From the NCBI GenBank assembly GCA_002269645.1, contig NIVC01001679.1, positions 62,001 through 126,000 on the forward strand: a stretch of DNA of 64,000 bases, written 5' to 3'. This DNA comes from Macrostomum lignano. Taxonomy: Eukaryota. Under the pieces are notes generated by a model. The model was not told where the DNA came from and ran no database searches. It was given only the letters and a program-made list of their open reading frames with translations. The stretch's first letter is position 1; each line of letters opens with the position of its first letter. This document shows, in pieces, positions 3,104-61,345 of this stretch. The position numbers were made by a program, and so were the translations under genes.

Positions 3104-3167
3104 GTCTATCTGTCTACCTATCTATCTATCTATCCATCTATCTATCTATCTATCCATCTATCTATCC

Positions 3168-3243
<76 letters not shown>

Positions 3244-3315
3244 GTCTATCTGTCTACCTATCTATCTATCTATCTATCTATCTACCCATCTATCTATCTA
3301 TCTATCTATCTACCC

Positions 3316-3412
<97 letters not shown>
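2780..3412. repeat. (TCTA)n microsatellite
   Basis: Direct inspection. Confidence 0.97.
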
Positions 3413-3413
<1 letters not shown>

Positions 3414-4299
3414 TACACTTTAATTTTTCGTTCTTGGCCATATGATCATTTTTCAAGTTTTAGGCTGTTAAAAAAAATATGAAACAAGCCGAATACGTTC
3501 AAGCTTAGAAAAAATAATATCTGCAAGCCAGATAGAAGTCTAGTTTGCAGTCCGGCCCTGCTGCTCTTATAGAGAACAATTTACCGAAATGTATGAAACG
3601 ACAGAAGCTCAACATGACCAATAGAGCGACATTATGAGAGCCCAGTGAATATAGCTTGAGACGAGAGAGAGTCGGGGAATTTGAAATTTGACACAGCTGC
3701 TGTTGCAAGTGGAAATTGAAAAAGAAACAATAAGTGCTCGCATCAGGTGTTCCGGGGCTCTCCCTCACCTCCCTCTCTCACCGTGTCTTTTTCTGCGCTC
3801 AGTTTTTGTTTCGGCGGTTTTGATCGGAATTGGTTTCCATAGAATTTAGTATATCCTATAATTCAAACCGAAGGAAGTAACGACAGGTTTTTCTAAGAAT
3901 CTCAAAGCAATGAAAGTTGAACTGCTCTGAAAATATGTTTTAGATATGGCAAGAAGAAGGAGAGAGAGAGAGAGAGAGAGAGAGCGGGGGATCTGTTGAA
4001 GTGAGCATTTTCGTTATAAACTGGCGTATATTATTATAACTGAGAAGTGAGGAGTTCCCGGCCTCACACACAATGCTCTGCTCAATTGCAGCTGTCCGGG
4101 GGTTCTCCGCTACAAGTGGGCAGCGGTAGTGCTCGTGCGGGCGAGGGTTAGCCGCTCTAAGGAGGTGTTGAAACAGCGTTTTCGGCTGTAAATCCGCAAT
4201 AGCTTCTCTCTGTGTCTCTTTGGCATGTATCCATTTCTGCAGTTTTGTTGCGATGCGGCCTATAGCCAGATGGGATTGACAGCTCTGCACCCCAGCTTT

Positions 4300-4920
4300 C
4301 ACACTTCTTGTCACTCCGCTATTCACTCTCCTTGTCACTCTACCTGTCACTCTCCTTGTCACTCCGCTATTCACTCTCCTTGTCACACCGCTATTCACTC
4401 TCCTTGTCACTCTCCTTGTCACTCTCCTCGTCACTCCAGCTTTCACTCTCCTTGTCGCTCTCCTCGTCACTCTAGCTTTCACTCTCCTTGTCACTCTAGC
4501 CGTCACTCTAGCTTTCACTCTCCTTGTCACTCTAGCCGTCACTCTCCTTGTCACTCTTCTTGTCACTCTCCTTGTCACTCTAGTTTTCACTCTCTTTGTC
4601 ACTCTAGTTTTCACTCTCCTTGTCACTCTTCTTGTCACTCTCCTTGTCACTCTAGCTGTCACTCTCTTTGTCACTCTAGTTTTCACTCTCTTTGTCACTC
4701 TAGCTTTCACTCTCCTTGTCACTCTCCTTGTCACTCTCTTTGTCACTCTAGTTTTCACTCTCTTTGTCACTCTAGCTTTCACTCTCCTTGTCACTCTAGC
4801 TGTCACTCTCCTTGTCACTCTAGCTGTCACTCTAGCTGTCACTCTCCTTGTCACTCTCCTTGTCACTCTAGTTTTCACTCTCCTTGTCACTCTAGCTTTC
4901 ACTCTCCTTGTCACTCACTC
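4300..4920. repeat. 12-bp minisatellite (TCACTCTCCTTG)
   Basis: 4-aa periodic translation. Confidence 0.92.
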
Positions 4921-43164: not shown

Positions 43165-44300
43165 CGCACTCTGTCCAATGTACACTCTGTCCAATGAACA
43201 CTCTGTCCAATGTACACTCTGTCGAATGAACACTCTGTCCAGTGTACACTCTGTCCAATGTACACTCTGTCCTATATACACTCTGTCCAGTGTACACTCT
43301 GTCCAATGTACACTCCGTCCAATGTACACTCTGTCCAATGTACACTCTGTCCAGTGTACACTCTGTCCAGTGTACACTCTGTCCAATGTACACTCTGTCC
43401 AGTGTACACTCTGTCCAATGTACACTCTGTCCAATGTACACTCTGTCCAGTGTACACTCTGTCCAATGTACACTCTGTCCAATGTACACTCTGTCCAATG
43501 TACACTCTGTCCAATGTACACTCTGTCCAATGTACACTCTGTCCAATGTACACTCTGTCCAATGTACACTCCGTCCAGTGTACACTCTGTCCAATGTACA
43601 CTCTGTCCAATGAACACTGTCCAATGAACACTCTGTCCAGTGTACACTCTGTCCAATGAACACTCTGTCCAATGAACACTCTGTCCAATGAACACTCTGT
43701 CCAGTGTACACTCTGTCCAATGTACACTCTGTCCAATGAACACTCTGTCCAGTGTACACTCTGTCCAATGTACACTCTGTCCAATGTACACTCCGTCCAG
43801 TGTACACTCTGTCCAATGTACACTCTGTCCAATGAACACTCTGTCCAATGAACACTCTGTCCAGTGTACACTCTGTCCAATGTACACTCTGTCCAATGTA
43901 CACTCCGTCCAGTGTACACTCTGTCCAATGTACACTCTGTCCAATGAACACTGTCCAATGAACACTCTGTCCAGTGTACACTCTGTCCAATGTACACTCT
44001 GTCCAATGTACACTCTGTCCAATGTACACTCTGTCCAATGTACACTCTGTCCAATGTACACTCTGTCCAATGTACACTCTGTCCAATGTACACTCTGTCC
44101 AGTGTACACTCTGTCCAGTGTACACTCTGTCCAATGAACACTCTGTCCAGTGTACACTCTGTCCAATGTACACTCTGTCCAATGTACACTCTGTCCAATG
44201 TACACTCTGTCCAATGTACACTCTGTCCAATGAACACTCTGTCCCATGTACACTCTGTCCAATGTACACTCTGTCCAATGAACATTCTAATGTACACTTG
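43165..44300. repeat. 16-bp minisatellite (TACACTCTGTCCAATG) filling a GNPAT intron
   Basis: Direct inspection. Confidence 0.96.
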
Positions 44301-44334
44301 GTCACTAATCGCCATCACCAATATAAAACTGCAG

Positions 44335-44827: not shown

Positions 44828-44946
44828 CCACTACTACTACTACGGTACTACTCTACTATTACTTTTACTATTACTACTACTACTACTACTACTATTACTA
44901 CTACTACTACTCCTACTACAACAACAACAACAACTACTACTGCTAT

Positions 44947-44989
<43 letters not shown>

Positions 44990-44994
44990 GCTAT

Positions 44995-45049
<55 letters not shown>

Positions 45050-45054
45050 GCTAT

Positions 45055-45106
<52 letters not shown>

Positions 45107-45147
45107 GCTATTACTACTACTACTATTACTACTACTACTACTGCTAT

Positions 45148-45196
<49 letters not shown>

Positions 45197-45201
45197 GCTA
45201 T

Positions 45202-45256
<55 letters not shown>

Positions 45257-45287
45257 GCTATTACTACTACTACTACTACTACTACTG
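44828..45287. repeat. (ACT)n microsatellite in a GNPAT intron
   Basis: Direct inspection. Confidence 0.96.
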
Positions 45288-45298
45288 CAACCCACCAG

Positions 45299-45874: not shown

Positions 45875-46262
45875 TGACAGCCAATCACAGAACAGATAGA
45901 GTGATGTCAGCCAATCACAGAACAGAGGTGGTGGCATCCAATCACAGAACAAATATTGGTGTCAGCCAATCGGAGAACAGATAGAGTGACGTCAGCCAAT
46001 CACAGAACAGATAGAGTGATGTCAGCCAATCACAGAATAGATAGAGTGATGTCAGCCAATCACAGAACAGAGGTGGTGGCAGCCAATCACAAAACAAATA
46101 TTGGTGTCAGCCAATCGGAGAACAGATAGAGTGATGTCAGCCAATCACAGATCAGATAGAGTGATTTCAGCCAATCACAGAACAGATAGTGGTGTCAGCC
46201 AATCGGAGAACAGATAAGAATGGTGGCAGCCAATCACAGCACAGATAAGGTGATGACAGCAA
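45875..46262. repeat. About 30-bp CCAAT-containing minisatellite in the last GNPAT intron
   Basis: GCCAATCACAGAACAGATAGAGTGATGTCA. Confidence 0.9.
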
Positions 46263-46290
46263 ATCAAAAAAACCCGCTATTTGCTTTCAG

Positions 46291-47253: not shown

Positions 47254-47494
47254 TCAGCGAGACCCCCGGGAAGACGAACTCGATTTTTCGTTGCTTCTCC
47301 GAGCTTGTCGACAATTCGGCGACGGCAACGGCGACTGCGGTGGCGATCGGCGGGATCGGCGAGAGGTCGACAACGAATTTCTGGGCTTCTGTTTGTCTCC
47401 TGAGATCGAGGATTTGCTGGACTTTGCGGCTGGCGAGGCGCTGCTGCGGCGGTGGCCGGAGCGGCCGCGACTGCGACTGTGGGAGCGGCTGCGG
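47254..47494 (-). CDS. SRSF10: SRSF10/12-like SR protein, exon 4 (RS domain, stop)
   Basis: Pyrimidine-rich acceptor CTTCGCCTGCCCCCTCCGCCAG|C; RRSRSHSRSRGRSGHRRSS...SRRSRRSPP...SRGSR*. Spliced product about 190 aa. Confidence 0.82.
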
Positions 47495-47579
47495 CTGGCG
47501 GAGGGGGCAGGCGAAGTCACGTGATGCGTTTTTTGGCAGGCGAGTTATTAATATTTTAGGTGTGATTCCTGATTGATCT

Positions 47580-47972
47580 GAGATGCTGGCCCAACAACTG
47601 AGGATCTGGGAGGCTGGCCCAGCAACTGAGGATCTGGGAGGCTGGCCCAGCAACTGAGGATCTGGGAGGCTGGCCCAGCAACTGAGAATCTGGGAGGCTG
47701 GCCCAGCAACTGAGAATCTGGGAGGCTGGCCCAGCAACTGAGGATCTGGGAGGCTGGCCCAGCAACTGAGAATCTGGGAGGCTGGCCCAGCAACTGAGAA
47801 TCTGGGAGGCTAGCCCAGCAACTGAGGATCTGGGAGGCTGGCCCAGCAACCGGGGATCTGGGAGGCTGGCCCAGCAACTGGGGATCTGGGAGGCTGGCCC
47901 AGCAACCGGGTATCTGGGAGGCTGGCCCAGCAACCGGGGATCTGGGAGGCTGGCCCAGCAACCGGGGATCAG
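47580..47972. repeat. 28-bp minisatellite in SRSF10-like intron 3
   Basis: GGAGGCTGGCCCAGCAACTGAGGATCTG. Confidence 0.94.
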
Positions 47973-47992
47973 GGATCGCGCAGCAGCCTCAC

Positions 47993-48163
47993 CGTCGAGT
48001 CCCGCCAGTGTCCCGCCCGGAACCCTCCATCCGCTCCATCCGCATCATCTCAGCGGGAGTTCGCCGCTGCCCTCTCGCAAACTCGATCTCGATAGCTCGG
48101 CCAAGAAAATTGGTCCCATCCAGCCGCTTGTGCGCCTCTTTAGCGTCGCTCGAATGATTGTAA
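47993..48163 (-). CDS. SRSF10: SRSF10/12-like SR protein, exon 3 (5' boundary 48163 if AC acceptor, 48202 if AG)
   Basis: YNHSSDAKEAHKRLDGTNFLGRAIEIEFARGQRRTPAEM matches [39 protein letters not shown]; donor CG|GTGAGG. Confidence 0.85.
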
Positions 48164-49845
48164 GTGAAATTTTTGTCCGGATTGGCAATCGATGGGGATT
48201 GCCTTTGTCGGTGAGTTAAAGACTCATTAATTGATGTTATTTGAGTGATAGAATTTACACATTATTACACAACTACCTACTACAAGCCTTACTATACAAT
48301 TACTTAGCTATGACAGCTCCTTAGTTACTCCTTCCTACAGAAGGAGTAATTCTAAAACTGAATAGGGTTTCAGAACCCTTACCGTACAGATCGGCTCATT
48401 TTTTAACTACAAGTCGAGATAGAGAATCTAGCGTCTGATTGTGGGCCAGAGAGGGGAGAGGAGAAAGGAGAGAAGGCAGGGGAGGGGAGAGAAGATAGGG
48501 GAGGGGAGAGAAGATAGGGGAGGGGAGAGAAGATAGGGGGTAGGGGAGAGAAGATAGGGTAGGGAAGGGGAGAGAAGATAGGGGGGAAGGGAGAGAAGAT
48601 AGGGGAGGGAAGGGGAGAGAAGATAGGGGAGGGGAGAGAAGATAGGGGGTAGGGGAGAGAAGATAGGGTAGGGAGAGAAGATAGGGGTAGGGGAGAGAAG
48701 ATAGGGGGTAGGGGAGAGAAGATAGGGGAGGGGAGAGAAGATAGGGGAGGGGAGAGAAGATAGGGGGTAGGGGAGAGAAGATAGGGGTAGGGGAGAGAAG
48801 ATAGGGTAGGGGAGAGAAGATAGGGGGTAGGGGAGAGAAGATAGGGGTAGGGGAGAGAAGATAGGGGGTAGGGGAGAGAAGATAGGGGAGGGAGGGGAGA
48901 GAAGATAGGGGAGGGGAGAGAAGATAGGGGAGGGGAGAGAAGATAGGGGGTAGGGGAGAGAAGATAGGGGAGGGAGGGGAGAGAAGATAGGGGAGGGGAG
49001 AGAAGATAGGGGGTAGGGGAGAGAAGATAGGGGGTAGGGGAGAGAAGATAGGGGAGGGAGGGGAGAGAAGATAGGGGGTAGGGGAGAGAAGATAGGGGAG
49101 GGAGGGGAGAGAAGATAGGGGAGGGGAGAGAAGATAGGGGTAGGGGAGAGAAGATAGGGGGTAGGGGAGAGAAGATAGGGGAGGGAGGGGAGAGAAGATA
49201 GGGGTAGGGGAGAGAAGATAGGGGAGGGGAGAGAAGATAGGGGGTAGGGGAGAGAAGATAGGGGAGGGGAGAGAAGATAGGGGAGGGAAGGGGAGAGAAG
49301 ATAGGGGAGGGAAGGGGAGAGAAGATAGGGGTAGGGGAGAGAAGATAGGGGAGGGGAGAGAAGATAGGGGAGGGAAGGGGAGAGAAGATAGGGGAGGGAA
49401 GGGGAGAGAAGATAGGGGAGGGAAGGGGAGAGAAGATAGGGGAGGGAGGGGAGAGAAGATAGGGGAGGGGAGAGAAGATAGGGGGTAGGGGAGAGAAGAT
49501 AGGGTAGGGAAGGGGAGAGGAAACAGGAGAGAAAAGAGAAGAGAGATGAGACCAGGGAACAGAGGCGTAGTGAGGGGTGATGGGGGGAGGTGTTTCACCT
49601 CCTTCGAATAGCCAAAACGTGTTTTCAGTCTGTATTTCTCCTAGGGGCAGCCTATCCCCTAAAGAAGAAATTTCTGGCTACGCGCCTGCAAGAGAGAGAT
49701 TAGTGAGAAGAGACACAAACCCTGAGCAAGCCGCAGTTTTCCAACCCCTGCTTTATCTTTAAAGTATAACAAGTAAAATTCTAGCAAAGATTAGCCGAAC
49801 AGTTAAAACAGTTTCAGATGAATTCATATTTATTTAAAAGGATAT
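48164..49845 (-). other. U12-type (minor spliceosome) intron, AT-AC or AT-AG
   Basis: 5' end ATATCCTTTT is the exact U12 donor consensus; in-phase AC at 48165-48164 and AG at 48204-48203; branch-like TCTTTAAC at 48222-48215. Confidence 0.8.
48450..49545. repeat. About 21-bp G/A-rich minisatellite inside the U12-type intron
   Basis: GGGGAGAGAAGATAGGGGGTA variants. Confidence 0.93.
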
Positions 49846-49950
49846 TGCACAAAAGCGTAGCCCTTCATTCGACCTGAATAATAGTCCAGCGGCACAGTCA
49901 GATCATAAATCGAGCCGTATTTGGAGAATAAGTGACGAATCTCTTCGTGC
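49846..49950 (-). CDS. SRSF10: SRSF10/12-like SR protein, exon 2 (105 nt)
   Basis: Acceptor CTTTCAG|G; HEEIRHLFSKYGSIYDLTVPLDYYSGRMKGYAFV aligns without gaps to [34 protein letters not shown]; followed by ATATCCTTTT. Confidence 0.92.
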
Positions 49951-50284
49951 CTGAAAGTTTTCAAGTTATAAGCAGGTCAGTAACTCTTAACAACTTCAAT
50001 ATGCAAAGAATAAGGTTTTCAAATAATTTAAGATAATTAAAATTCCTTCAAAAATCAACTTCCCAGCATAGTGATTTGAATGCAAAATTTAATATGCATG
50101 TATGCACTTTATGAAGGCAAACGTGTACTCTTTATTGTACTTACTTTATGTACTTTACGCACATGCACTTTTACATTTATTACTTTTTAATTCTACCTGC
50201 AAAATACATTGCCTGTGAAGTATCTCTGGGTGGATTCTGTACGTTTTGGATGAGTTATGTATGTTTTGGATCGATTCTGTATGG

Positions 50285-50600
50285 TTTTTTATGGATTCTG
50301 TATGCTTTGAATGAGTTTCTGTATGATTTTGGATGAGTTCTGTATGCTTTGGGTGAGTTCTGTATGCTTTGGATGAGTTCTGTATGCTTTGGATGAGTTC
50401 TGTATGCTTTTGATGAGTTCTGTATGCTTTGGATGAGTTCTGTATGCTTTGAATGAGTTCTGTATGCTTTGGATGAGTTCTGTATGCTTTGGATGAGTTC
50501 TGTATGCTTTGGATGAGTTCTGTATGCTTTGGATGAGTTCTGTATGCTTTGGATGAGCTCTGTATGCTTTGGATGAGTTCTGTATGCTTTGGATGGATTC
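50285..50600. repeat. 20-bp minisatellite (TTCTGTATGCTTTGGATGAG)
   Basis: Direct inspection. Confidence 0.92.
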
Positions 50601-51044
50601 TGTGCGAATGGTGCGAATGCTACTTCAACTGTCACTTTATAAGTCGAGGAAGCAAGAGACAGCAAGCACAATGTCCTTGAATAAGCATGCCCTCCCGCCT
50701 GTTGAAGCAATACCTGTAATTGATTTCTCGCTAGTTTGAATTGAATTGCAACAGGAAGGAACCCACATTAACTTCTTTCAATCTTCATAATCGATGCTTT
50801 GCAATTGAAAATTCAAACCGGAAAAATTTGAATTGAAAACAATTTGAATAAAATGTTTCACTGAATCAAAACGCTTTTATTTGCGACAGACAATAGGGGG
50901 TGGCGACAGACAATAGGCTATTATAGGAGCGACTAGTCCAACACAAAATCATTCAAAACACAATAAGATTCAACCGTTAACTGTGACAAATTTCACTATA
51001 ATGAGAGTCCATTCCAACTGACTTTCTCAACACGTCCCATTTCC

Positions 51045-52139
51045 TCAGTTTTCGTTTATTAACATTAAACGCTTGAAGCATTGCCGGAATTGCGGACTAC
51101 GACGCAGCAGCACAAAGAAACTCGCGCACTGATTAACGAGAGCCAGAGTGAGGCTGCAATAAGCAAAGTTAGTTATCATGCTTAAATAGTCAATATAGTC
51201 GCCCATGTCTAGCAGATTAACGGAGATTTCGCCAGCAAGCCTCAGAGTCATAGCTGGCAAGTTTAGTGCCAAGTAAACAATCGATAGAATAAAAACAATT
51301 ATTGTTCCATTAATTTCGGCAATCGAGTAGCGCATAGCAACGCTTTGAGGCGACAGAATTCGACGCCTATTGTTGGCAGCCAGTCGAACCCGACTCAACA
51401 GAAATCCATTCAGGCCCAACATCAGTAGCATGAAAACCAGTGGAGGATTTGACAGCAACGAAGTGTAAGCCAGCATGGCTAATCTAACCTCGTGGCCGCG
51501 ATAGCAATACTTCAGCACTGTTCCGTCTGGCATGGTGGCAGTCACGTGACCAACTAGAATCCCATTCGGCAGGGCAATTAAAACCGACAGCAAGAATGAA
51601 GCAACCAAAGCTTTAATGGCCCATCGTATGCCTACTTTTTGCATGACGAGCGGTCGGTGAACAACCAAAACCCGGTCGATCACCAGGACTAACATCCATA
51701 AACACGAGAGCGTGTGACAGAAATTCAGAGCATAGCGAGACACTTTGCACATGTTATCGCTCAGATTGTAGCTGATAAAAGCCAGTCGACCTCTAGTGAT
51801 CCACGGCAGGCCTTTGGTGAGGAACACGTTAAACACTCCAATAACTACGAGGCTCAATATGTCGACAATGGCATTGCAGCCAAGGAAAAGATTCTGCCGA
51901 GTTAGCGGTCGAATCCGGTTCAGCATGATATGAGCAACAATGATGTTTCCAATTGCTCCAACAATTATTATAATTGGTAGCACGATGCCCGATATTGAGC
52001 CAACCACGTGAGACATGATGCAGAATAAGCGCCTGGATGGATCTCCACTCAGGCAGTCTCTCACCATTTGCATTGCATTCTCAGTGTATCCGGTTTTTAC
52101 TACCACAGTTTCAGAGTTGTTTTGAGCACCTTGCAGCAT
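51045..52139 (-). CDS. Intronless rhodopsin-like (class A) GPCR, peptide-receptor-like orphan
   Basis: Seven hydrophobic segments; TM1 GAIGN, TM2 NAIVD, TM3 C...VIDRV (DRY-like), TM4 W, TM6 LNLP, helix 8 SPQFRQCF. First ATG 52139 (track ORF starts at TTG 52166). Confidence 0.88.
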   Translation of the reverse strand: MLQGAQNNSETVVVKTGYTENAMQMVRDCLSGDPSRRLFCIMSHVVGSISGIVLPIIIIVGAIGNIIVAHIMLNRIRPLTRQNLFLGCNAIVDILSLVVIGVFNVFLTKGLPWITRGRLAFISYNLSDNMCKVSRYALNFCHTLSCLWMLVLVIDRVLVVHRPLVMQKVGIRWAIKALVASFLLSVLIALPNGILVGHVTATMPDGTVLKYCYRGHEVRLAMLAYTSLLSNPPLVFMLLMLGLNGFLLSRVRLAANNRRRILSPQSVAMRYSIAEINGTIIVFILSIVYLALNLPAMTLRLAGEISVNLLDMGDYIDYLSMITNFAYCSLTLALVNQCASFFVLLRRSPQFRQCFKRLMLINEN

Positions 52140-52343
52140 TTCACTGTACTTGTCAGTGTCTAACAAATTCCAAAGACGATTTTTGCTTTGCGCAAAGGTT
52201 TTGAATGCAAGCTATTATTAATGAAAATTTCTTCGATTCATCATCCAATAAGAATGATGATGGCAGCACAAGCACAGCTGTTCAATCTTTCCTGGTTGAT
52301 GATTTGCTGACAAAAAAAGAATGTATCGCTGGTATGCTGGTTG

Positions 52344-53891
52344 CCCCAGGAACCCGGGTCCTGCACATAATAGTGTGATGAACTACAGATATCTGTGCAG
52401 TATGAGTCTGGTATGGTCTCTTTCCCAGCCAGCGATGCTCACACCTGTCTCATCAGACGGGTTGATAGTTCAAGAGACTCCGCGGCCATACCATCTGCCA
52501 CCATCGGGGCGCCCCAGCGAGACCAAGCAGCTGAGTACCATTGCCCACGACAGCGGAAGCTTCCCAATCTGGGGCCCTGAGCCCACTGAAGTCCCTGCCC
52601 AGGATAGGGAGGCTGATGCAGCCGGAAGGGTGGACAGTTCACCTGATGAAGGCTCCACCGAACCCCGGGCCCCCTACGCTGAGGCGGCAAAGAGGCAACC
52701 GGCGGTTGTCATCCTGGGGAAGGACGTGCGCCTGTTCCCCGACCAGTTGAAGCAGAAGAGCTGCACTGTTGATGGCCTACTGTGGAAGCTCACTCTGAAA
52801 GGCACACCTCTGAACATTCACTAGAATGCGACGAGGGACTCGTGCCTTCTTATTTGGCCCGTGATGCTGACCCGGGATGGCGGCTCCTTTGAGCTGCTGC
52901 CCTAGCAGAGCTGGGACCTCAAATTAGCCTTCTGTGCAGAGGACGAGCGCCTCCGGACCAAGAGGCATAGAATCTGGGTTCTGGCCAGGAGCGTCGTTAC
53001 CTCTGCTGACGAGCTCCGGAAGAGACTGCTTTCAGTCAACCGAGAGCTTCCCGCTAGTGGTGCATGACACCCTAAAGCGCACCGACGGAACCGGGAATTT
53101 ACTTTTTTTTCACTCCGACAGCCAAGCAGCCCTTCGGGCCCTCTGCCGCAGCACCACCAGCTTCAGATCTGTCCCGGACTGCAACGCTCAGTTCAATGGA
53201 CTCGCTCAGGGCAACCAGGTGGGGCTCAGATGGATCCCGAGCCACGCTGGTTTCCTCGGCAACGAGCGCGCTGACCTGCTGGCCAAGGCTGGCTCCGCCG
53301 GCGCGCTGCTGGGGCCGGGCCCAGGGATCCCCATCCCCGCCTCGGTGATCAAATCCCGCATCAAGCGCTGGACTGACTCCAAGCATCTCCAGAGGTGGCG
53401 CGACACTTGGAACGGCAGGCAATCCCGTGCTGCCGTCCCCTGTCTCTCTCCCCTCCTGCGTAGAGCCCTCCTCAGGCTCAACCGCAGAGACTTCAGAGCA
53501 GTCAGCATGGCCCTCTTCGGGCATGGCTGCTTCTCTCGCCACCGTTTCCTTCAGGGCCAGGTACCTGAGGAGCGGTGCCCCTTCTGCCGCTCAGGCAGTG
53601 AAAACGCTGAGCACTCATCAGGGCCAAGCTACCTCGGGCCAAACCCGGTTCTCTCAGACGTTTTCAGACCCGAGAGCATCCCGCTGCTCCCCCGGTACCT
53701 CAAGGACACGGGACGAGCTGAGTTCTTTCCCAACGCCGGTAAGGAGGACCGCGCTGCAGGCGAGACCGACGGGTCCCCCTGAGCGACAACGCTTCGACGG
53801 AAGTCATTGGTCGCCAGAAGCCAGCGAAATGGGCGGTCTCCTCCACCTCCTCGCTGCATCCGCCGGCCGATGCCCCCTGCAGCTGAGTCAA
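52344..53891 (+). mobile_element. 5'-truncated, decayed non-LTR retroelement with RNase H and C-terminal Cys/His knuckle (R1/LOA/I-like)
   Basis: ORF 52934-53782 has FHSDSQAAL...LRWIPSHAGFLGNERADLLAK (RNase H) and CPFC...ENAEH; flanked by the 13-bp direct repeat GGTATGCTGGTTG (52331-52343 and 53892-53904). Confidence 0.8.
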
Positions 53892-54160
53892 GGTATGCTG
53901 GTTGATGATTTGCTCACAAGAAGAGAGAAGGCGTCATTGGTATGCTGGTTGGTGATTTGCTCACAAGAAGAGAGAAGGCGTCATTGGTATGCTGGTTGGT
54001 GATTTGCTCACAAGAAGAGAGAAGGCGTCATTGGTATGCTGGTTGGTGATTTGCTCACAAGAAGAGAGAAGGCGTCATTGGTATGCTGGTTGGTGATTTG
54101 CTCACAAGAAGAGAGAAGGCGTCATTGGTATGCTGGTTGGTGATTTGCTCACAAGAAGAG
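53892..54160. repeat. 47-bp minisatellite, about 5.7 copies
   Basis: GGTATGCTGGTTGGTGATTTGCTCACAAGAAGAGAGAAGGCGTCATT. Confidence 0.93.
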
Positions 54161-54171
54161 AACGTATCGCT

Positions 54172-54315
54172 CAGTGGCGTAAACAGAAATTTGTTGAAGG
54201 GGGTGGATTCTAGAGGGTAAAACCCAAAGGGGGCGGAGTGAGTGGCTCTGTATTTTGGCGAAAATGGGCTTGGAAAATGCACAGAACAGAACACCCCCTC
54301 CCAGTTACGCTAAAG
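54172..54315. mobile_element. Short hAT-like MITE
   Basis: Termini CAGTGGCGTAA / TTACGCTAAAG (8/11); 8-bp TSD GTATCGCT (54164-54171, 54316-54323); diverged relative at about 63548-63660. Confidence 0.65.
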
Positions 54316-54909
54316 GTATCGCTGATATGCTGGTAGGTGATTTTCTTACAAAGAAGAGAAGGCATCGACACTCAAGGAGGCAATCTATTTTGCTGAAATC
54401 TTTTGATTCAAAAGGAACCTGTCAGTAATTATGTAAGTGTGAGAAAAACAAGCACAGGTATCTATTAGTACTAGCTTCAGGCGTGCTCTTGCAGTGCCCT
54501 TTTTTTCTTGCAAGTCTCATGCAAGTTTTAATCCAACTCTATAGTTGTGCAATGTGATTTACTGCTTGTTCTGTCTTAATTGTCTCTAAATTCTATAAGT
54601 CCTAGAGAATTTCTATTTGATTACTCCGGTTCAATACTTGAGTTTGCTTTTCTTTTACCATCTTAGGTTACTTCATGATTCAGTTTTCAAACAGTTTTCA
54701 ATTCTGACTTCTTATCAAAGGCTAACAGAAATTTTCTACTGGCACTCATAGTACTCAGTCAGTTTGTTTGTTGCATAGCATAAGGTATGTAGCTTGGTGC
54801 TGCTAAAATAAAAAAGTTGACCCACAAACATTGAGGGGACAAGCAGTTCTGCTTATTCTGCAAACCAATGACAACATACATGAAATATGATAATTCAGAT
54901 GACCAAAAA

Positions 54910-55560
54910 TTAAGTTTTTATAATTTTTCAAGGACAACTTAAGTAGAATAGAAAACCTTGTTTCTTGGAAATTTTTTTGAAGGCAATACATTACAGAGAT
55001 AAGAAATTTTCATCTTTATAGCACAAAAATTGTTATTGCTTTTGATAGGAGGCAGATCCAGCATTCACCTTTTGATATGTTGTGCCTTTCTTATTGCTCT
55101 ATTGATATTCATAAAGCTTTTTGTTCAGAAAATTAGGATTCTATGTTAATTTTTATTCTATATACATTTGCACATATCTTATGCCGAGAAACCCTTATAA
55201 TGGCACAGCTAGGCTCTTTGGTTTTGAGTCTATTTTATCATTATTAGCTGACTGTGTAACATGGGTAGCAGAGATGATACAATAGATTAAAAAATATTGG
55301 AACTATGCATGATTAAAAAATTAACATGGAATCCTAATTTTCTAACCAAAAAGCTTTATATCAATAGAGCAATAGAAGGGCATAACATATCAAAAGATGA
55401 ACATTGGATCTGCCTCCTATCAAAAGCAATAACAATTTTTGCATTGAAAAATGAAAACTTCCTATCTCTGTAGTCTCTTTAAAAACTGCCTTCAAAAATT
55501 TTCTAAGAATTGAGGTTTCCCGTCCTTCTACTCAAGTCATCTTTGAATTTTTTATTTTTA
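54910..55560. mobile_element. Old foldback element, about 250-bp diverged inverted arms
   Basis: TTGTTATTGCTTTTGATAGGAGGCAGATCCA (about 55030) pairs with TGGATCTGCCTCCTATCAAAAGCAATAACAA (about 55405); complementarity extends both ways. Confidence 0.75.
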
Positions 55561-56698
55561 TGAGCAACATAAATAATTATTCAAAATAAGATTTTAGCTA
55601 AAAAACTTGCATAATTTCATTTTAAAATTTTGCATATTTCACATTTTAGATGTAAAGCAAATTTATTGCATTTAGAAGCAAAGCCACTAAGCACAATATT
55701 AACATTTAAGAAAGAAAAGAAAAGAAAAAAAGAAAGAAAAGAAAGAAAGAGTCTTATAAAATTATATTTGATACACAAAAACAATTCCATACACTATGCA
55801 GTGTGAACAAAAAGGCAGACATCAAAAGTGCTCATTTTAACCATATAGAAAAGTTAAATTAAAAGGCAGAATATGAGTATATAAAATTATATACTAAATT
55901 TCTTATTGTTTTTTAAATGTCTAATGCTCATTTTTTTATATCATTGCAATGGCCTCCAGGCCATCGTCAAGAAGGTGCAATCTTTGCACTAGATTAAATT
56001 TATCCCATTTTTTCCCATTGTGCCATGCACTAAAGCATTTTTTCCTTGCGCCATATATTGGCACTTTGGGTTGCCATACCCCAAAATTAAAAAAGTAAAA
56101 AAGCTGTTTTAACTTTTAGTACTTTTACTATTTTATTATTTTTCCTAGATTCCAATTTTTGTCTAAGCCAAAAATAGTAAATAGCAATTTTGAATAGCAA
56201 ATTAGTGGCAAATTGAATTTGAACTTCAAGGAGTCTTTTATGTTTGTAATAAAATTAAATATTGTTGTTGAGTTATAACTATAACAAACAAACTTCCAAA
56301 AATACAAAATATATATAGCATGGGCATATCACAAAATCTGCTTAATTCTTATATTATTCATAATCAAAGAAATCTATACCATGTGTCTATAGTGCCAAGT
56401 TGCAGGCTCTCATTATTCATTTTATACTAAATGCACTGAGTATGCCAGAGAAATAGCCTATTTGTAGCAAAAAATTGATGAAATCTATTGCCTTTTTGAC
56501 CATGGCCTTGCTTGAGGTTATCACTATATTCTTAAAGTATTGTTTGAATTATTCTTAAACATTATTTTTTTTTTATTAATGCATCTGTAGTACACCTTAA
56601 TTTCATAGTTTAAATTGGTGCCAACTCGAGGCGGGTGTTAAGTAAAGCAAAGTAATCACATCGCAATGTAATAATACTTGTATATTTTTGTTTCATTC

Positions 56699-59600
56699 AA
56701 TACTTTATATTCGTAACTTTATATCAGCTGAATTTCATCGCCTTAGCTCGATGGTGAGTCCAATAAATGCTGAATCATAGCTCATCATCATCATCACAGA
56801 TTCCTGGCAGTGACCTGCATCAGCGCACCGGTAATCCTGGGCTGCAACTTCCTTAACAAATTTGACATTTCGATTCACCTGAGATCAGGCATTCTCGAGT
56901 TTAATGGCCTTAGCATCACCTTGCCAATGCGGACATCCAGGCAGGCGGCCCAGACTTGCAAGCTAGCAGCGGCAGCCACGGTTCGACTGCAGCCAGGCAA
57001 TGGCTGGATCATTCCGGTGCAGCCAGCGAGCGTGGCAGCGTGGACGAACTTGGAGGCACCAGGCATTGTCTGCGGCAGCAAGGCTGGTTGACCAAGCTGG
57101 TTGACCACGGAATGGGGGTTGCTGTCATCAACACCAGAGATGAGACAGTCAAGATCAAGGAGGGCGACATTGTCGGCAACTTCAACCTGCTGTCTGGCCG
57201 AGCCATGGCGCACCTGCAAGCCGGAGGATCTGGTGATGCCAGCGAGGCAGATCCGACTACTGCAACGACCTGGCAGGACAAGGTGCAAATCGCCGATGAC
57301 ATCCCAACTGAGGAGCGGCAGCAAGTCGAACGCCTTCTGCTAGAGTTCAGTGATGTATTTGCGAGCCCCAGCAACCCAGGCCGCACCCAGTTGTTAAAGC
57401 ACGAGATTGACACAGGCAACACCAGGCCAATTTGCCAAGGACTGCGGCGCTTGGCTCCCACAGCAATCGCACAGCAGAAGGAGCTAGTTAACAAGATGCT
57501 GGCAAAGGGAGTTGTCCAACCATTGTCATCACCTTGGGCATCTCCGATAGTTCTGGTTCGCAAGAAGGACAGGTCGGCCAGATTTTGCTTGGACTACTGC
57601 CTGCTGAACGCGGTGACCAAGCCCGATGCCTTCCTGATGCCCCGCATCGATGACACTCTGGATGCCCTCGAAGGAAACAGCTACTTCTCAGCGCTGGATC
57701 TCGAAAGTGGCTATTGGCAAGTCAAGATAAATGACCGGGAAAAGGAGAAGATGGCATTTGTATGCCATGAAAGCCTGTTTGAATTCAATGTGATGCCATT
57801 TGGACTACGGAATGTACCAGCCACCTTTCAGCGGCTCATGCAGCTGGTACTCCGGGGACTGACATGGCAGGCCTGTCTGGTGTTCATTGACGACGTCATT
57901 GTGATAGGCCAGACCATCGGCCAGCACAACAATCGGCTGCATTCAGTTCTGGAGCGACTGCGCAAGTTTAACCTGTGCCTCAAGCCATCAAAGTGCCAAT
58001 TTGCAAATACCAGCATGTTAGTCCTGGGCCACCGCGTCAGCAAGACCAGCATCACTGTCAATGAGGGCAAAACCGCGGCTGTGCGGGACTGGCCGGTGCC
58101 CCAGAGCTTGAAGGACGTCAAGAGCTTCCTTGGCATGACCTCCTACTACTGAAGATATGTGTGCGAATACGCCAAGATTGCCGAGCCTCTGCGCCGCCTT
58201 ACATTGCTGACGCCCATGCATGCGCAACCCCCCTGATTTACACTGGCCATGCGACTTACTTTTTGAACAAAAATGCGACTTACCTGTAAAAAAAAACCTG
58301 ACGCAATTTTGGGTAAACGGCAGGAGTAACTTTAACTGTCTTATTAGGGCTAAATGCCTCGTCATCTAATTAGTAATACGTCTGTATTCTTTAGGCTGGG
58401 CATTTTTGCGACTTACCCCTGGTCCACCACAATTTACGGTGGCCAGATCGGCCAGGTCGGCCAGCAGTTGCGCATTTATGCTGACGCCCTTCGAGTGGAC
58501 GCCAGAAGCCGAGACGGCCTTCAACCAGCTGAAGCAAGCACTGCTATCAGCTCCGATCCTGGCGTTCCCGGACATGAGCAAGTTGGGCTCCGAATTCATC
58601 CTCGACACTGACGCAAGTGACTGCGGCCAAGCGAGAGCAAGGACTCCAGCAAAGACAAAATCAGCAACGAGGCCATTCAGGAAGGCAAGGCGCTGTCAGA
58701 TGCGCCTCAGTCACTGCGTGAACTGCAGCTCCGTGATCCAGACATCAGCCCAGTGTTTCGCCTGCTGTCTAACGGCAAGACAAGGTTCAGTGCCAGCAGA
58801 CGTGACCGACTGTCGCCTGAGAGCCTAATTCTGGCACAGAAGATTGGCGACCTGTATTTTGTTGATGGCGCCCTGAACAAGCTGGTGAAGTCCAAGTCTA
58901 TACCTGTGATTCCGCGCTGCAGACAGGAGGAGTTCATCAAGGAGGTCCATGAGCTTGGGCATCTGGGCGAGGACAAGATCTTGGCAGCCCTCAAGCAGCG
59001 TTGCTACTGGCCGAAAATGGCGGAGAGCATTCGCCTAGCGGTCAGGTCCTGCCAAGTGTGCCAGCGCACTAAGACACCAAGTCAGCACCGAGCTCCACTG
59101 CAGACTATGGCCAGTGGATTTCCTATGCAATGCGTAGGCATTGACGTGGTCAAAGTTGGACTGTCACGGCGGGGAAACGATCGGCTGCTCACCATTGTCG
59201 ACTACTTCACCAAGTGGGTCAAGCTGGTGCCACTCCCTGACAAGAAAGCGGCCACCATTGCCAAGGCACTGTTTGACAACTGGGTGACGCGTTTTGGAGC
59301 CCTGCACATTCTGTACTCCGACTGTGGCAAGGCCATGGATGGCAAGGTCATCAGGAGTCTGTGCTGGCTGCTGGAGATTCAGAAGACGCGGACATCCGGC
59401 TACCATCTGCAGTGTGACGGCCTAGTTGAAAGGTTCCACCGCACTCTGCACCAGATGCTCCACTGCCACCTGCAGTCAGTCCAGCCGGATGACTGGGTAG
59501 AAGTGCTGCCTCATTGTCTCCTGGCCTACCACAGCAGCATCAATGCTACAACCGGGTTTACTCCTCACTGCCTGCTGACTGGCCAGGAAATGACGCTTCC

Positions 59601-60731
59601 AGTTGACGTTGTCTACCAGACACTAGAGCCGACAATGACAGTCCGCCAGTTCGCCACCAACAACCGCGACCAGCTGCTTTGTGCCTACAACTCTGTGCGG
59701 CGATCAATAGCGACGGCACAACGATGCCAGCGGTGGTACTACGACCAGAAGGCCAAGCGGTGCAGATTCCAGGTCGGCGACCTCGTATGGGTTTTTGTTC
59801 CATTGTCGGCACTTTCAAGGACAACTGGACTGGCTCCGAAACACTAGGCACCCTGGACCGGCCCATTCCGGGTGCTGCAGCAAACGTCGCCGGTGAACTA
59901 CCTGGTTTGTCCTATCAATTACAAGGATGGCGACACTGGTCGGGTGGTCCATGCAAACAAGCTGAAACGTGCGCACCAGCCCTGCACTCCCAACCTGGCG
60001 TGGAGTAAGGCGACCAGTGACTGCAGCAGCAAAGTTCTTGACGATGGCTGGGTCCTAGTGTGAGTCTGACAATCTTTTTTTGCCAATTTCTGCAACCTGC
60101 ACAGTTTGTGCTTGAGTTGTGCATTTGTGCGCTGTTCCAGCAGAGCTGCATTTGCGTGTCACTTGGCTAAATATTTTTTGTATCTAATTTGTTTTTAAGA
60201 TTCAAATCTGCTGTCTTTTTAAGTTTTAGTCAGTTGTTGTGGTTTCCGAGTTCTAGGCTGGTGCTTTATATATTCCCTTATATATTAAATTGCATTTTGC
60301 TATCAAAATATTTATTTTCGATTTCAACAATATTTTCTAAATTAAAAAATGGTAAATTTTCGCATTGGAGTGAATATTGCATTTCTATTCTGCATTGACA
60401 TAATTGTTTGATTTTTAGCATCCCTTAGGGTACATGCATTGATCATCATCCGATATTCTATTGAATTAGACTTGAGCATTTTTGTTCTGCATTATGTTCA
60501 AATTGCATTGGTGAAGTCCTAAATTGCTGTGGTTGAAGAATTTTGCCGCTATTTTTGAAGTTGGCTTTATTTAACTTTTGCTCATACGCGATTCAATCCT
60601 TTAGTGTCCGTCTTGTGAGCGTGCATTGAACACAACTTGTATTGTTTAATACTTTATATTCATAACTTTATATCAATTGAATTTCATCGCTTTAGCTCAA
60701 TGGTGAGTCCAATAAATGCTGAATCATAGCT
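56699..60731 (+). mobile_element. Decayed Ty3/Gypsy LTR retrotransposon (protease end, RT, partial RNase H, integrase); gag absent
   Basis: PVILGCNFL (protease end); SPWASPIVLVRKKD, MPFGL, FIDD (RT); DTDASD (RNase H); HELGH...CQVC, GIDVV/SDCG/GLVERFH (integrase); GPF motif near 59860; 84-bp direct repeats with AATAAA at 56699-56782 and 60648-60731. Stops and frameshifts present. Confidence 0.9.
58215..58480. mobile_element. hAT-type MITE inserted in Gypsy pol
   Basis: 14-bp TIR CATGCATGCGCAAC / GTTGCGCATTTATG (12/14); 8-bp TSD CTGACGCC (58207-58214, 58481-58488); removal restores EPLRRLTLLTPFEWTPEAE. Confidence 0.85.
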
Positions 60732-61289
60732 TGAACTGTTACTGGCTAGGCTTTAGACTGTGCCTAGTAAGCAGGGAGCTATGCAAACTTGTGATTGGGC
60801 GATAAAGGCTCAAAGTCAAATTTGGTGTCCTGCCTCCATTCTTGCTACACATCAGTGCAACTTAATAATCAGGGGCTTAGAATTTTTAGGCATTCTTGGT
60901 ATACACCTCAACTTTAGTCTAAAAAACCTCTTTGTATATACTAGATACCTTTTTGATGATGGAGTAGTAGGCTAGTAGCTCTAAATATTTAGTCAAAATT
61001 ATTTGATTTCATAAAATTTCAGAATGACCCTTATCATAATTTTGAATCTCTAGGAAATTTTGGTATCCAATGGAATTTACTTTAATCATTAATCAAAATA
61101 GCATCCCTTCGAGACAGAAAATCTCGAAGAAACTAAATCTCGAAGACACTAAATCGAAGACACTAAAAACTTTAGACACTAAATTTAAGTTAAACATTAA
61201 AACAATGAAAGAGGAACCTAAACTAAACCTGACTTAATAATTATTAGGGCAAAGATAAAATTTGATAGCAGCAATAAATTTATACTTAC

Positions 61290-61345
61290 TTAGCCTGATT
61301 AGAAATATTGCGAACATACAAAACACGATAATTTGTTTTCGACAT
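61290..61345 (-). CDS. SRSF10: SRSF10/12-like SR protein, exon 1
   Basis: MSKTNYRVLYVRNISNQA(K) has the RNP2 motif in register with SRSF10 SLFVRNVADDTR; donor AA|GTAAGT, phase 2 fits exon 2. Too short for the ORF track. Confidence 0.8.

What the first reader, a model, noticed from the sequence alone, without database searches (positions are those of the whole stretch)
48164..49845. U12-type (AT-starting) minor intron retained in an SRSF10-like gene at the vertebrate position
Seen: the 105-nt exon ending ...GYAFV-CA is followed by ATATCCTTTT, a perfect U12 donor, with no GT at the junction. Known: vertebrate SRSF10 has an AT-AC minor intron at this point (GFAYVQ|F), used to tie SR-protein levels to minor-spliceosome activity. 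Inference: this animal keeps a working minor spliceosome and possibly an ancient SRSF10 regulatory circuit. That matters if the host is a flatworm, because minor introns are lost in several invertebrate lineages. GT-AG-only predictors will mis-annotate this gene.
Basis: partly seen in the sequence, partly recalled or inferred. Interest (0 to 1): 0.78.

Follow-up and report, generated by a model that had tools for sequence, protein, structure and literature searches.

The report
Minor (U12) intron in flatworm SRSF10
The flatworm Macrostomum lignano keeps, in its SRSF10-type splicing-factor gene, the same rare AT-AC "minor" intron found at that exact spot in corals, annelids, tapeworms and fish: a real, correctly spotted feature, but an expected one, with one odd detail at its 3' end.

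Summary
The window is Macrostomum lignano contig NIVC01001679.1. On the minus strand a 105-nt exon (49950..49846) ends ...GYAFV-CA and is followed by ATATCCTTTT. The intron (49845..48164, 1682 nt) ends TTTCAC. The RNA-evidence-based GenBank protein joins V-H-Y exactly across this AT-AC junction.

I fetched orthologue loci. The same U12 donor sits at the same codon position and phase in a coral, an annelid, a tapeworm and a fish. The intron is absent from a monogenean, an acanthocephalan and plant SCL33. It is therefore an ancestral animal minor intron. Flatworms were already known to keep minor snRNAs (Schistosoma, Schmidtea), so this is a new member of a known kind.

The vertebrate autoregulatory module was not found here: no competing GT donor and no purine-rich poison exon. 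It is visible in the fish and annelid loci.

One feature is unusual. The only U12 branch-site match (TCTTTAACT) lies 51 nt from the used 3' site, against the usual 10-20 nt. The spacer folds into a stable stem-loop (z about -4). That fold covers an optimally spaced in-frame AG and is flanked by two GACAAA motifs. Junction reads from public RNA-seq would settle which 3' site is used.

I also located the unannotated exon 1, 11.3 kb upstream.

The parts
61290..61345 (-). Exon 1 coding part (ATG at 61345; MSKTNYRVLYVRNISNQA + AA). It carries the RNP2 motif, and the donor is AA|GTAAGT. It is not in the GenBank model.
   Evidence: It is the only RNP2-like hit upstream on this strand and was read. 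The phase fits exon 2. With it the model gives a complete RRM_1 (profile positions 1-69 of 70, E 3.7e-17) and a 573-nt open CDS. This is inferred from sequence; I saw no RNA evidence.
49951..61289 (-). Intron 1, GT-AG, 11,339 nt. Same position and phase as intron 1 of the coral and fish orthologues. It holds a GPCR-like ORF and retroelement ORFs.
49846..49950 (-). Exon 2, 105 nt, the first half of the RRM, ending GYAFV + CA.
   Evidence: Exon 2 is also 105 nt in the coral and the fish (counted by hand on the sequences printed).
49837..49845 (-). U12-type 5' splice site ATATCCTTT.
   Evidence: The identical motif sits at the identical codon position in Orbicella, Anabas, Capitella and D. latus.
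48164..49845 (-). AT-AC minor intron, 1682 nt (the finding).
   Evidence: The RNA-based protein P0001 is spliced exactly here. The second genomic copy, L002, keeps both ends.
48467..49504 (.). Minisatellite, 19-20-nt unit x about 50. It is pyrimidine-rich on the transcribed strand and makes up about 60% of the intron.
   Evidence: TRF. Purine fraction is 0.05-0.09 on the transcribed strand. Copy number differs between the two genomic copies. It is probably neutral.
48214..48222 (-). Candidate U12 branch site TCTTTAACT (8 of 9 to TCCTTAACT; the C-to-T change keeps a G-U pair with U12). It lies 51 nt upstream of the 3' splice site.
   Evidence: It is the only T[CT][CT]TT[AG]A[CT] match in the whole intron. 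Its role as the branch site is inferred, not mapped.
48177..48211 (-). Predicted stem-loop in the spacer between the branch site and the 3' splice site: CCG-ACAAA-GGCAATC-CCCATC-GATTGCC-AATC-CGG.
   Evidence: Spacer MFE is -12.7 kcal/mol, z -3.96, 1 of 1000 shuffles as stable. The 96-nt context gives z -4.24. It is not a repeat in the window. No covariation test was possible because the two copies are identical here.
48203..48204 (-). Proximal AG, 12 nt after the branch motif (the optimal U12 spacing). Use of it would add 39 nt in frame (13 aa) and break RNP1. Its G is the first paired base of the 7-bp stem.
   Evidence: No evidence that it is used.
48172..48209 (-). Span holding two GACAAA motifs (48209..48204 and 48177..48172). 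GACAAA is the core of the SRSF10 SELEX motif AAAGACAAA.
   Evidence: They are the only two GACAAA in the intron, and both lie in the 51-nt spacer (Poisson P about 1e-4, post hoc). The motif is cited in PMC8522700. Binding is not tested.
48164..48166 (-). 3' splice site CAC| (the intron ends in AC).
47993..48163 (-). Exon 3, 171 nt: second half of the RRM plus the SRSF10-type tail IEIEFARGQRRTPAEM. The donor is CG|GTGAGG.
47495..47992 (-). Intron 3, GT-AG, 498 nt, with a 28-nt x 14 minisatellite.
47254..47494 (-). Exon 4 coding part: most of the RS domain (81 aa in all, starting at the end of exon 3; 57% R+S; 15 RS/SR dipeptides). Stop codon TGA at 47256..47254.

Best explanation
This is intron 2 of the Macrostomum lignano SRSF10 orthologue. 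The gene encodes a 190-aa protein with one RRM and an RS domain. The intron is a U12-type AT-AC minor intron inherited from at least the cnidarian-bilaterian ancestor.

Mechanism, with the status of each step:
- Shown by sequence and orthology: the donor ATATCCTTT is of the type recognised by U11 and then U6atac.
- Shown by the RNA-based annotation: the exons are joined at CA|T, giving the RNP1 motif KGYAFVHY.
- Inferred: U12 pairs with TCTTTAACT at 48222..48214. The 35-nt stem-loop at 48211..48177 shortens the 51-nt gap to the CAC| acceptor to roughly 17-19 nt, within the 10-20 nt that minor splicing normally needs. The same fold hides the nearer AG and AC.
- Generic consequence, not tested: if the intron is retained, the frame stops at once (VQYPF*). 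Output of this splicing factor therefore depends on minor-spliceosome activity, as for any gene with a minor intron.
- The vertebrate-style poison-exon switch was not found here.
For: - Identity of locus and organism: L001 is 100% identical to the window and comes from GCA_002269645.1.
- Donor, acceptor and frame.
- P0001 (BOX15_Mlig026735g1) reads ...GYAFVHYNHSSDA.... The GenBank annotation comes from StringTie/STAR/BLAT transcript evidence (PMC5730564).
- SRSF10 orthology. The best named hits are SRSF10/SRSF12 of molluscs, coral and fish (E 1e-15 to 1e-13). TRA2 hits start at about 1e-9 and plant SCL33 at about 2e-8. The profile search gave SRSF10 orthologues, including flatworm ones that share the YYSGRMKG motif. 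The RRM is complete and the RS domain is 57% R+S.
- Positional homology: the CA|ATATCCTT or GA|ATATCCTT junction, in the same phase, occurs in Orbicella, Anabas, Capitella and D. latus. Their branch motifs ([CT]CCTT[AG]AC) lie 9-19 nt from the 3' site.
- Branch motif: unique in the intron.
- Spacer structure: z about -4.
- Flatworm minor snRNAs are published (PMC2770079, PMC6312358).
- The second genomic copy keeps all these signals.
Against: - The linear distance from the branch motif to the 3' site (51 nt) is outside the 10-20 nt reported for minor introns (PMC8199999).
- The bridging stem-loop is only a thermodynamic prediction. There is no covariation support, because the only second copy is identical in this region.
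- I saw no reads myself. Junction use rests on a published annotation, and an alternative +39-nt isoform could exist unannotated.
- Minor snRNA and protein genes of M. lignano itself could not be searched with the tools available.
- Exon 1 is my own inference.
Confidence: 0.85

Rival explanations
1. The vertebrate-type autoregulatory circuit is conserved in M. lignano. In that circuit a downstream major GT donor competes with the minor donor and splices to an internal purine-rich, SRSF10-bound poison exon with a poly(A) site.
For: - Read-through past the minor donor stops after four codons (VQYPF*), as in mammals.
- One copy has AATAAA 12 nt into the intron.
- Two possible internal exons have good acceptor/donor pairs: 49685..49599 and 48434..48383.
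- The layout does look ancient elsewhere. Capitella has TAG followed by GTGAGG 22 nt after the U12 donor and a CAAG-rich stretch. The fish and the coral have purine-rich peaks of 0.80 and 0.75 at 100-350 nt into the intron.
Against: - No GT donor above 2.6 bits lies in the first 246 nt of the M. lignano intron. The gene's own donors score 7.8 and 8.9 (crude PWM).
- There is no purine-rich window: the maximum is 0.56, and 60% of the intron is pyrimidine-rich minisatellite.
- There is no second U12 donor.
- The AATAAA is destroyed by a T-to-G change in the second copy.
Confidence: 0.07
2. The stem-loop and the GACAAA motifs form a lineage-specific switch. With the stem formed, the distal AC is used and the protein is productive. 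With the stem opened, or with SRSF10 bound to GACAAA, splicing shifts to the optimally spaced proximal AG (+13 aa, RNP1 broken) or the proximal AC (frameshift). That would give autoregulation by 3' site choice.
For: - The proximal AG lies 12 nt after the branch motif, the optimal spacing. It is in frame, and its G is the first paired base of the stem.
- The stem is unusually stable.
- Both GACAAA motifs of the intron lie in the spacer. GACAAA is the core of the SRSF10 SELEX site (PMC8522700).
- TCGATTGCC, the 3' arm of the stem, is shared with the D. latus spacer (23 of 5000 shuffles).
Against: - All of this is post hoc.
- No alternative isoform is in the GenBank annotation, which kept alternative transcripts when their CDS differed.
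- The RNA-binding preference of the flatworm protein is unknown.
- In D. latus the shared 9-mer pairs, if at all, in a different topology.
Confidence: 0.12
3. It is a U2-type AT-AC intron removed by the major spliceosome.
For: Rare U2-type AT-AC introns exist (general knowledge). The branch motif is far from the 3' site, and a very long pyrimidine tract lies in the intron.
Against: - U2-type AT-AC donors resemble ATAAGT (general knowledge), not ATATCCTTT.
- The donor here is 9/9 U12 consensus and is identical in five phyla.
- A U12 branch motif is present.
- The pyrimidine array ends about 270 nt before the 3' site.
Confidence: 0.02
4. It is an artefact: a pseudogene, a mis-assembly, or a chance motif next to an unrelated open frame.
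For: The GenBank model is 5'-partial, and the region is full of minisatellites.
Against: - Two genomic copies, 98.3% identical, both have intact exons and signals.
- The annotation is transcript-based.
- The 190-aa ORF is complete, with an RRM and an RS domain.
- Exon length, intron position and phase are conserved.
Confidence: 0.01

Closest known systems
Vertebrate SRSF10 (FUSIP1/SRp38) intron between exons 2 and 4: the AT-AC minor intron of Meinke et al. 2020 (PMC7244321)
   Same: The genes are orthologous. Exon 2 has the same length, 105 nt (hand count on the sequences). The donor ATATCCTT splits the codon after the RNP1 valine in phase 2 in both (fish locus). Minor splicing gives the coding mRNA, and read-through meets an early stop.
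   Different: M. lignano has no detectable competing downstream GT donor, no purine-rich exon 3 enhancer and no second U12 donor. Its branch motif is 51 nt from the 3' site, against 10 nt in the fish. The split codon is His (CA|T) instead of Gln (CA|A).
The same minor intron in other invertebrate SRSF10 orthologues: Orbicella faveolata, Capitella teleta, Dibothriocephalus latus
   Same: The donor, position and phase are identical, and the termini are AT-AC. The cestode and M. lignano share the flatworm protein signature YYSGRMKG[FY]AFV and the spacer 9-mer TCGATTGCC.
   Different: Their branch motifs lie 9-19 nt from the 3' site. Their introns are shorter or lack the minisatellite. The GenBank models of Capitella and D. 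latus mis-splice this intron, whereas the M. lignano model does not.
Nested U12/U2 arrangements such as Drosophila prospero (reviewed in PMC8329584)
   Same: An AT-AC U12 intron in a regulator gene, where the choice of sites could change the protein.
   Different: No nested U2 intron is evident here. Any alternative would be at the 3' site of the same U12 intron.
Structure-assisted 3' splice-site selection in yeast U2 introns (my recollection: Meyer et al. 2011, not checked here)
   Same: A stem-loop between the branch point and the 3' site would shorten the effective distance and mask nearer sites.
   Different: That case concerns the major spliceosome. Nothing comparable was found in the papers I read for a U12 intron. 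Here it is only predicted.

Membership tests
U12-type (minor) intron | 5' splice site (A/G)UAUCCUUU | tested here: met
   ATATCCTTT at 49845..49837, 9 of 9. Consensus from PMC8199999.
U12-type (minor) intron | Branch-site sequence UCCUUAAC near the 3' end | tested here: met
   TCTTTAACT at 48222..48214. It is the only match in the 1682 nt, and the one C-to-T change keeps a G-U pair with U12.
U12-type (minor) intron | Usual property rather than definition: branch site 10-20 nt from the 3' splice site (optimum 11-13) | tested here: not met
   51 nt lie between the motif and CAC|. A predicted 35-nt stem-loop would reduce the effective path to about 17-19 nt, which is an inference. An AG lies at 12 nt but is not the annotated site.
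U12-type (minor) intron | AT-AC termini (subtype) and no polypyrimidine tract before the 3' site | tested here: met
   AT...AC. The last 250 nt are 48-56% purine.
U12-type (minor) intron | Positional homology with established minor introns in orthologues | tested here: met
   Same codon position and phase in coral, annelid, cestode and fish, all with ATATCCTT and [CT]CCTT[AG]AC. The mammalian intron is experimentally minor (PMC7244321).
U12-type (minor) intron | Removal depends on U11/U12 and U4atac/U6atac snRNPs, and these exist in the organism | not testable with these tools
   No tool scans the M. lignano genome, and the window itself has no Rfam hit. Other flatworms have the full snRNA set (PMC2770079, PMC6312358).
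SR protein, SRSF10/SRSF12 subfamily | One N-terminal RRM with RNP2 and RNP1, followed by an RS domain of at least 50 aa with more than 40% R+S (definition from general knowledge: Manley and Krainer nomenclature) | tested here: met
   RRM_1 E 3.7e-17, full length. RNP2 is LYVRNI and RNP1 is KGYAFVHY. The C-terminal 81 aa are 57% R+S with 15 RS/SR dipeptides.
SR protein, SRSF10/SRSF12 subfamily | Closest relatives are SRSF10/12 rather than TRA2, SRSF2 or plant SCL. The post-RRM motif IEI.FA.G.RKTP..M is shared. | tested here: met
   Ranking. IEIEFARGQRRTPAEM compares with IEIQFAQGDRKTPNQM. No tree was built.
Vertebrate SRSF10 autoregulatory module (Meinke 2020) | Competing major GT donor just downstream of the minor donor | tested here: not met
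   The best GT in the first 246 nt scores 2.6 bits, against 7.8-8.9 for the gene's real donors (crude PWM).
Vertebrate SRSF10 autoregulatory module (Meinke 2020) | Internal exon with a GA-rich SRSF10-dependent enhancer, a poly(A) site and an unused minor donor | tested here: not met
   No purine-rich window and no second [AG]TATCCT. AATAAA is present in one copy only. The same scans do detect these features in the fish intron.

The most novel reading that the evidence does not exclude
In Macrostomum the ancestral poison-exon switch of SRSF10 has been replaced by a structure-gated choice of 3' splice site inside the minor intron. A stable stem-loop flanked by two SRSF10-type GACAAA motifs bridges a canonical U12 branch site to a productive AC 51 nt away. 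The same stem-loop masks an optimally spaced in-frame AG whose use would insert 13 residues into RNP1. The protein could then tune its own output by opening or stabilising the stem. I know of no documented structure-bridged U12 3' splice site; I did not search the literature for one.
Probability: 0.12. Interest if true: 0.6.

Novelty: new member of a known kind. Interest (0 to 1): 0.3.

Why it matters
**Annotation.** The locus now has a complete, checkable gene model for the M. lignano SRSF10 orthologue, because exon 1 was missing from GenBank. The same intron is mis-annotated in at least two other invertebrate genomes.

**Evolution.** The SRSF10 minor intron dates back to at least the cnidarian-bilaterian ancestor. 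It has been lost independently in a monogenean and an acanthocephalan. The vertebrate-like competing-site layout is visible in an annelid but not in this flatworm.

**Mechanism.** If the long, structured spacer between branch site and 3' site is real, it would be an exception to the distance rule of minor splicing. M. lignano allows transgenesis and RNAi, so it could be tested there.

None of this overturns current views. Flatworms were already known to have a minor spliceosome.

Tried and rejected
- **Premature polyadenylation at the AATAAA 12 nt after the donor.** Rejected, because the second genomic copy has AAAGAAA there.
- **GT-AG, GC-AG or other AT-AN alternatives around the junction.** 38 frame-preserving pairs were listed. 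Only AT(49845)-AC(48164) restores RNP1 and matches the deposited protein.
- **Vertebrate-type poison exon.** Scans for purine-rich windows, a second U12 donor and strong GT donors were negative in M. lignano and positive in the fish control.
- **A nearer branch site.** ATCCGGAC, 11 nt from the 3' site, was considered. It has GG where the two most conserved T's should be, so I rate it poor.
- **The stem-loop as a dispersed repeat.** There is no other copy in the window.
- **Plant SCL33 as a test for a pre-animal origin.** It has no intron at that point.
- **Rfam scan of the window for minor snRNAs.** No hits, as expected for 64 kb.
- **Literature pairing Macrostomum with U12 or minor spliceosome.** Nothing found. 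The supplement of Larue and Roy held here does not list species.
- **Search for M. lignano minor-spliceosome proteins.** Not attempted. A human query would rank the flatworm hit too far down the list to be seen, and each search is costly.
- **Locus look-ups that failed.** Three orthologue isoforms were not on record. P0047 turned out to be an unidentified metagenome eukaryote without the intron.
Full report
**What is in the sequence.** The gene lies on the minus strand. Exon 2 runs 49950..49846 and is exactly 105 nt. It encodes (K)HEEIRHLFSKYGSIYDLTVPLDYYSGRMKGYAFV and ends with CA. The next bases are ATATCCTTTT, with no GT at the junction. The intron ends ...AAAAATTTCAC at 48164, and exon 3 starts T TAC AAT CAT TCG AGC GAC GCT. 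The intron is 1682 nt.

RTATCCTTT occurs only once in the window on both strands. About 1.65 matches are expected somewhere by chance, so the motif alone proves nothing. Its position does (see "Positional homology").

I listed every GT/GC/AT donor and AG/AC acceptor pair within about 120 nt of the junction that keeps the frame open. Only AT(49845)-AC(48164) restores the RNP1 octamer KGYAFVHY and the usual spacing to helix 2. The junction cannot be slid by a base.

**Organism and gene model.** The spliced protein finds a 99%-identical GenBank entry, BOX15_Mlig026735g1 (partial) of Macrostomum lignano.
- The locus fetched for that entry (L001, contig NIVC01001679.1) is 100% identical to the window.
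- A second copy (L002, NIVC01001380.1) is 98.3% identical.
- The deposited protein reads ...GYAFVHYNHSSDA..., so it is joined exactly at the AT-AC borders.
- That annotation is derived from RNA evidence: STAR and StringTie on RNA-seq, BLAT-mapped de novo transcripts, and TransDecoder (PMC5730564). It therefore counts as indirect RNA support.
- The deposited model is 5'-partial and starts inside exon 2.

I found the missing exon 1 at 61345..61290 (MSKTNYRVLYVRNISNQA plus AA, donor GTAAGT). It is the only RNP2-like candidate upstream on that strand. The full model is:
- exon 1: 61345..61290
- exon 2: 49950..49846
- exon 3: 48163..47993
- exon 4: 47494..47254

This gives an open 573-nt CDS of 190 aa that contains the GenBank protein. 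It has a complete RRM_1 (E 3.7e-17, profile 1-69 of 70). Its 81-aa C-terminal domain is 57% R+S.

**Orthology.** The best named relatives are SRSF10/SRSF12 of molluscs, coral and fishes. TRA2 and plant SCL33 score worse. A profile search added orthologues from an annelid, a monogenean, a cestode and others. The flatworm sequences share YYSGRMKG[FY]AFV with M. lignano. The motif after the RRM, IEIEFARGQRRTPAEM, matches the SRSF10 motif IEIQFAQGDRKTPNQM.

**Positional homology.** I fetched genomic loci for orthologues and read the junctions.

| Species | 5' junction | Branch motif to 3' site | Intron |
|---|---|---|---|
| Orbicella faveolata (coral) | GTACA\|ATATCCTTTTTG | GCCTTAAC, 9 nt, AC\|A | 1894 nt |
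| Anabas testudineus (fish) | ATTCA\|ATATCCTTTGAC | CCCTTAAC, 10 nt, AT\|A | 1665 nt |
| Capitella teleta (annelid) | ATTCA\|ATATCCTTC | CCCTTAAC, 11 nt, AC\|A | 506 nt |
| Dibothriocephalus latus (cestode) | GTTGA\|ATATCCTTTTCGG | TTCCTTGAC, 19 nt, AC\|G | 531 nt |

- In all four, as in M. lignano, the intron splits the codon after the RNP1 valine in phase 2.
- In the coral and the fish exon 2 is also 105 nt (counted by hand on the sequences), and intron 1 has the same position and phase.
- The intron is absent from the monogenean Cichlidogyrus (L007), from the intronless acanthocephalan gene (L004), from an unidentified metagenome eukaryote and from Brassica SCL33 (L006).

The intron is therefore ancestral to at least cnidarians plus bilaterians and has been lost several times. 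Mammalian Srsf10 has the experimentally characterised AT-AC minor intron at this exon 2 donor (PMC7244321).

**The 3' end is unusual.** Minor introns normally have UCCUUAAC 10-20 nt from the 3' site, with an optimum of 11-13 nt (PMC8199999).
- In M. lignano the only branch-like motif in the entire intron is TCTTTAACT at 48222..48214. Between it and the used CAC| lie 51 nt.
- Two nearer sites exist. GAC| lies 8 nt after the motif; it is not among the frame-preserving joins, so using it would shift the frame. AAAG| lies 12 nt after the motif; using it would add 39 nt in frame but give KGYAFVQQ..., breaking RNP1.
- The spacer folds as CCG-ACAAA-GGCAATC-CCCATC-GATTGCC-AATC-CGG (48211..48177). Its MFE is -12.7 kcal/mol, against -4.8 +- 2.0 for shuffles (z -3.96; 1 of 1000 as stable). 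The 96-nt context gives z -4.24.
- The G of the proximal AG is the first paired base of the 7-bp stem.
- With the element folded, the path from the branch A to CAC| is about 17-19 nt.
- The only two GACAAA hexamers of the intron flank this element (P about 1e-4, post hoc). GACAAA is the core of the SRSF10 SELEX motif AAAGACAAA (PMC8522700).
- The 3' arm, TCGATTGCC, also occurs in the D. latus spacer (23 of 5000 shuffles), and CGATTGC lies near the 3' end in Capitella. The predicted pairing in D. latus has a different topology.
- The two M. lignano copies are identical over the last 150 nt, so covariation cannot be assessed.

I treat structure-bridging as the most economical explanation of the long spacer. 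It remains an inference.

**Is the vertebrate circuit present?** In mammals a downstream GT donor in extended exon 2 splices to a purine-rich exon 3. That exon carries an SRSF10-dependent enhancer, a poly(A) site and an unused minor donor (PMC7244321, PMC8329584).
- My scans recover this layout in the fish intron: purine peak 0.80 at about 200-350 nt, GTATCCT at 477 and poly(A) signals.
- A purine-rich peak (0.75) is also present in the coral.
- Capitella has an in-frame TAG followed by CTTAG|GTGAGG 22 nt after the minor donor, and a CAAG/CAAAG-rich stretch.
- M. lignano has none of these. No GT donor above 2.6 bits lies in the first 246 nt. No window exceeds 0.56 purine. About 60% of the intron is a pyrimidine-rich 19-20-nt minisatellite with about 50 copies.
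- AATAAA lies 12 nt after the donor in this copy but is mutated in the other copy.

The intron is conserved. The vertebrate-style switch is not evident in this animal.

**Minor spliceosome in the host.** I could not scan the M. lignano genome for U11, U12, U4atac and U6atac or for the specific proteins. The window itself has no Rfam hit.
- The published record shows complete minor snRNA sets in Schistosoma (PMC2770079) and Schmidtea (PMC6312358).
- Minor introns are reported in Schistosoma (PMC10639083).
- No paper in the library pairs Macrostomum with U12 or the minor spliceosome.
- An expressed essential-type gene has a perfectly conserved ATATCCTTT donor, AT-AC ends and a U12 branch motif. 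This is hard to explain without a working minor spliceosome. The conclusion is still an inference.

**Verdict.**
- The core interpretation is correct: a U12-type intron at the vertebrate position in an SRSF10 orthologue of a flatworm.
- The suggested significance is overstated. Flatworms were already known to keep minor splicing. The M. lignano annotation already splices this junction correctly. The regulatory circuit is not detectable here.
- What is new and modestly useful: the completed gene model, the demonstration that the intron is shared from coral to fish and mis-annotated in two public genomes, and the long structured spacer between branch site and 3' site. The spacer deserves a look in existing RNA-seq data.

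Noticed in passing
window 61290-61345 (-): Exon 1 of the SRSF10-like gene lies 11.3 kb upstream of exon 2 and is missing from the GenBank model, which is 5'-partial and starts at 49913 inside exon 2.
   Followed up: yes
window 51045-52166 (-): A 373-aa intronless ORF with a rhodopsin-type 7TM match (7tm_1, E 1.4e-6, just under the Pfam cut-off). It lies inside intron 1 of the SRSF10-like gene, on the same strand.
   Followed up: partly
window 52934-53782, 56956-58152, 58753-59847 (+): Retroelement ORFs (RNase H, reverse transcriptase, integrase with H2C2 zinc finger; a Ty3/gypsy-like order) inside the same intron 1, on the opposite strand.
   Followed up: partly
window 47575-47975, 48467-49504, 50235-50603; also about 44000-44320, 44850-45290 and 45880-46290: Every intron of this gene, and the neighbouring DNA, carries long minisatellites with units of 19-28 nt and 14-50 copies. 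Copy numbers differ between the two genomic copies.
   Followed up: partly
L008 (Dibothriocephalus latus) about 2195-2725; L009 (Capitella teleta) about 1908-2413: The GenBank models of both orthologues read into the U12 intron (...FAFVEYPFRDAEDA, ...SYIQYPSFSIDPRDAEDA). These are GT-AG-only mis-annotations of the same minor intron.
   Followed up: yes
L009 about 1908-1935 and 2120-2340: Capitella has an in-frame TAG and a strong GT donor (CTTAG|GTGAGG) 22 nt after the minor donor, plus a CAAG/CAAAG-rich stretch. This is a vertebrate-like competing-site layout in an annelid. The coral intron also has a purine-rich peak at 100-300 nt.
   Followed up: partly
window 48184-48192 (-); L008 about 2710-2718; L009 about 39 nt before the 3' end of the intron: The 9-mer TCGATTGCC is shared by the spacers between branch site and 3' site of M. 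lignano and the cestode (23 of 5000 shuffles). CGATTGC is also present in Capitella. This is unexplained.
   Followed up: partly
L005 (Anabas testudineus) 3129-4793: This fish SRSF10-like paralogue appears to end its minor intron in AT (AT-AT termini), not AC.
   Followed up: no
L007 (Cichlidogyrus casuarinus), L004 (Neoechinorhynchus agilis), L010/L011 (metagenome eukaryote): Orthologues without the minor intron. The acanthocephalan gene is wholly intronless. These look like independent losses.
   Followed up: partly
window 49599-49685 and 48383-48434 (-): Two stretches inside the minor intron are bounded by a good U2-type acceptor and donor: CTTGCAG|...GAG|GTGAAA and AATCAG|...ACG|GTAAGG (9.2 bits). 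They could be cryptic exons. No upstream U2 donor is available to use them.
   Followed up: no
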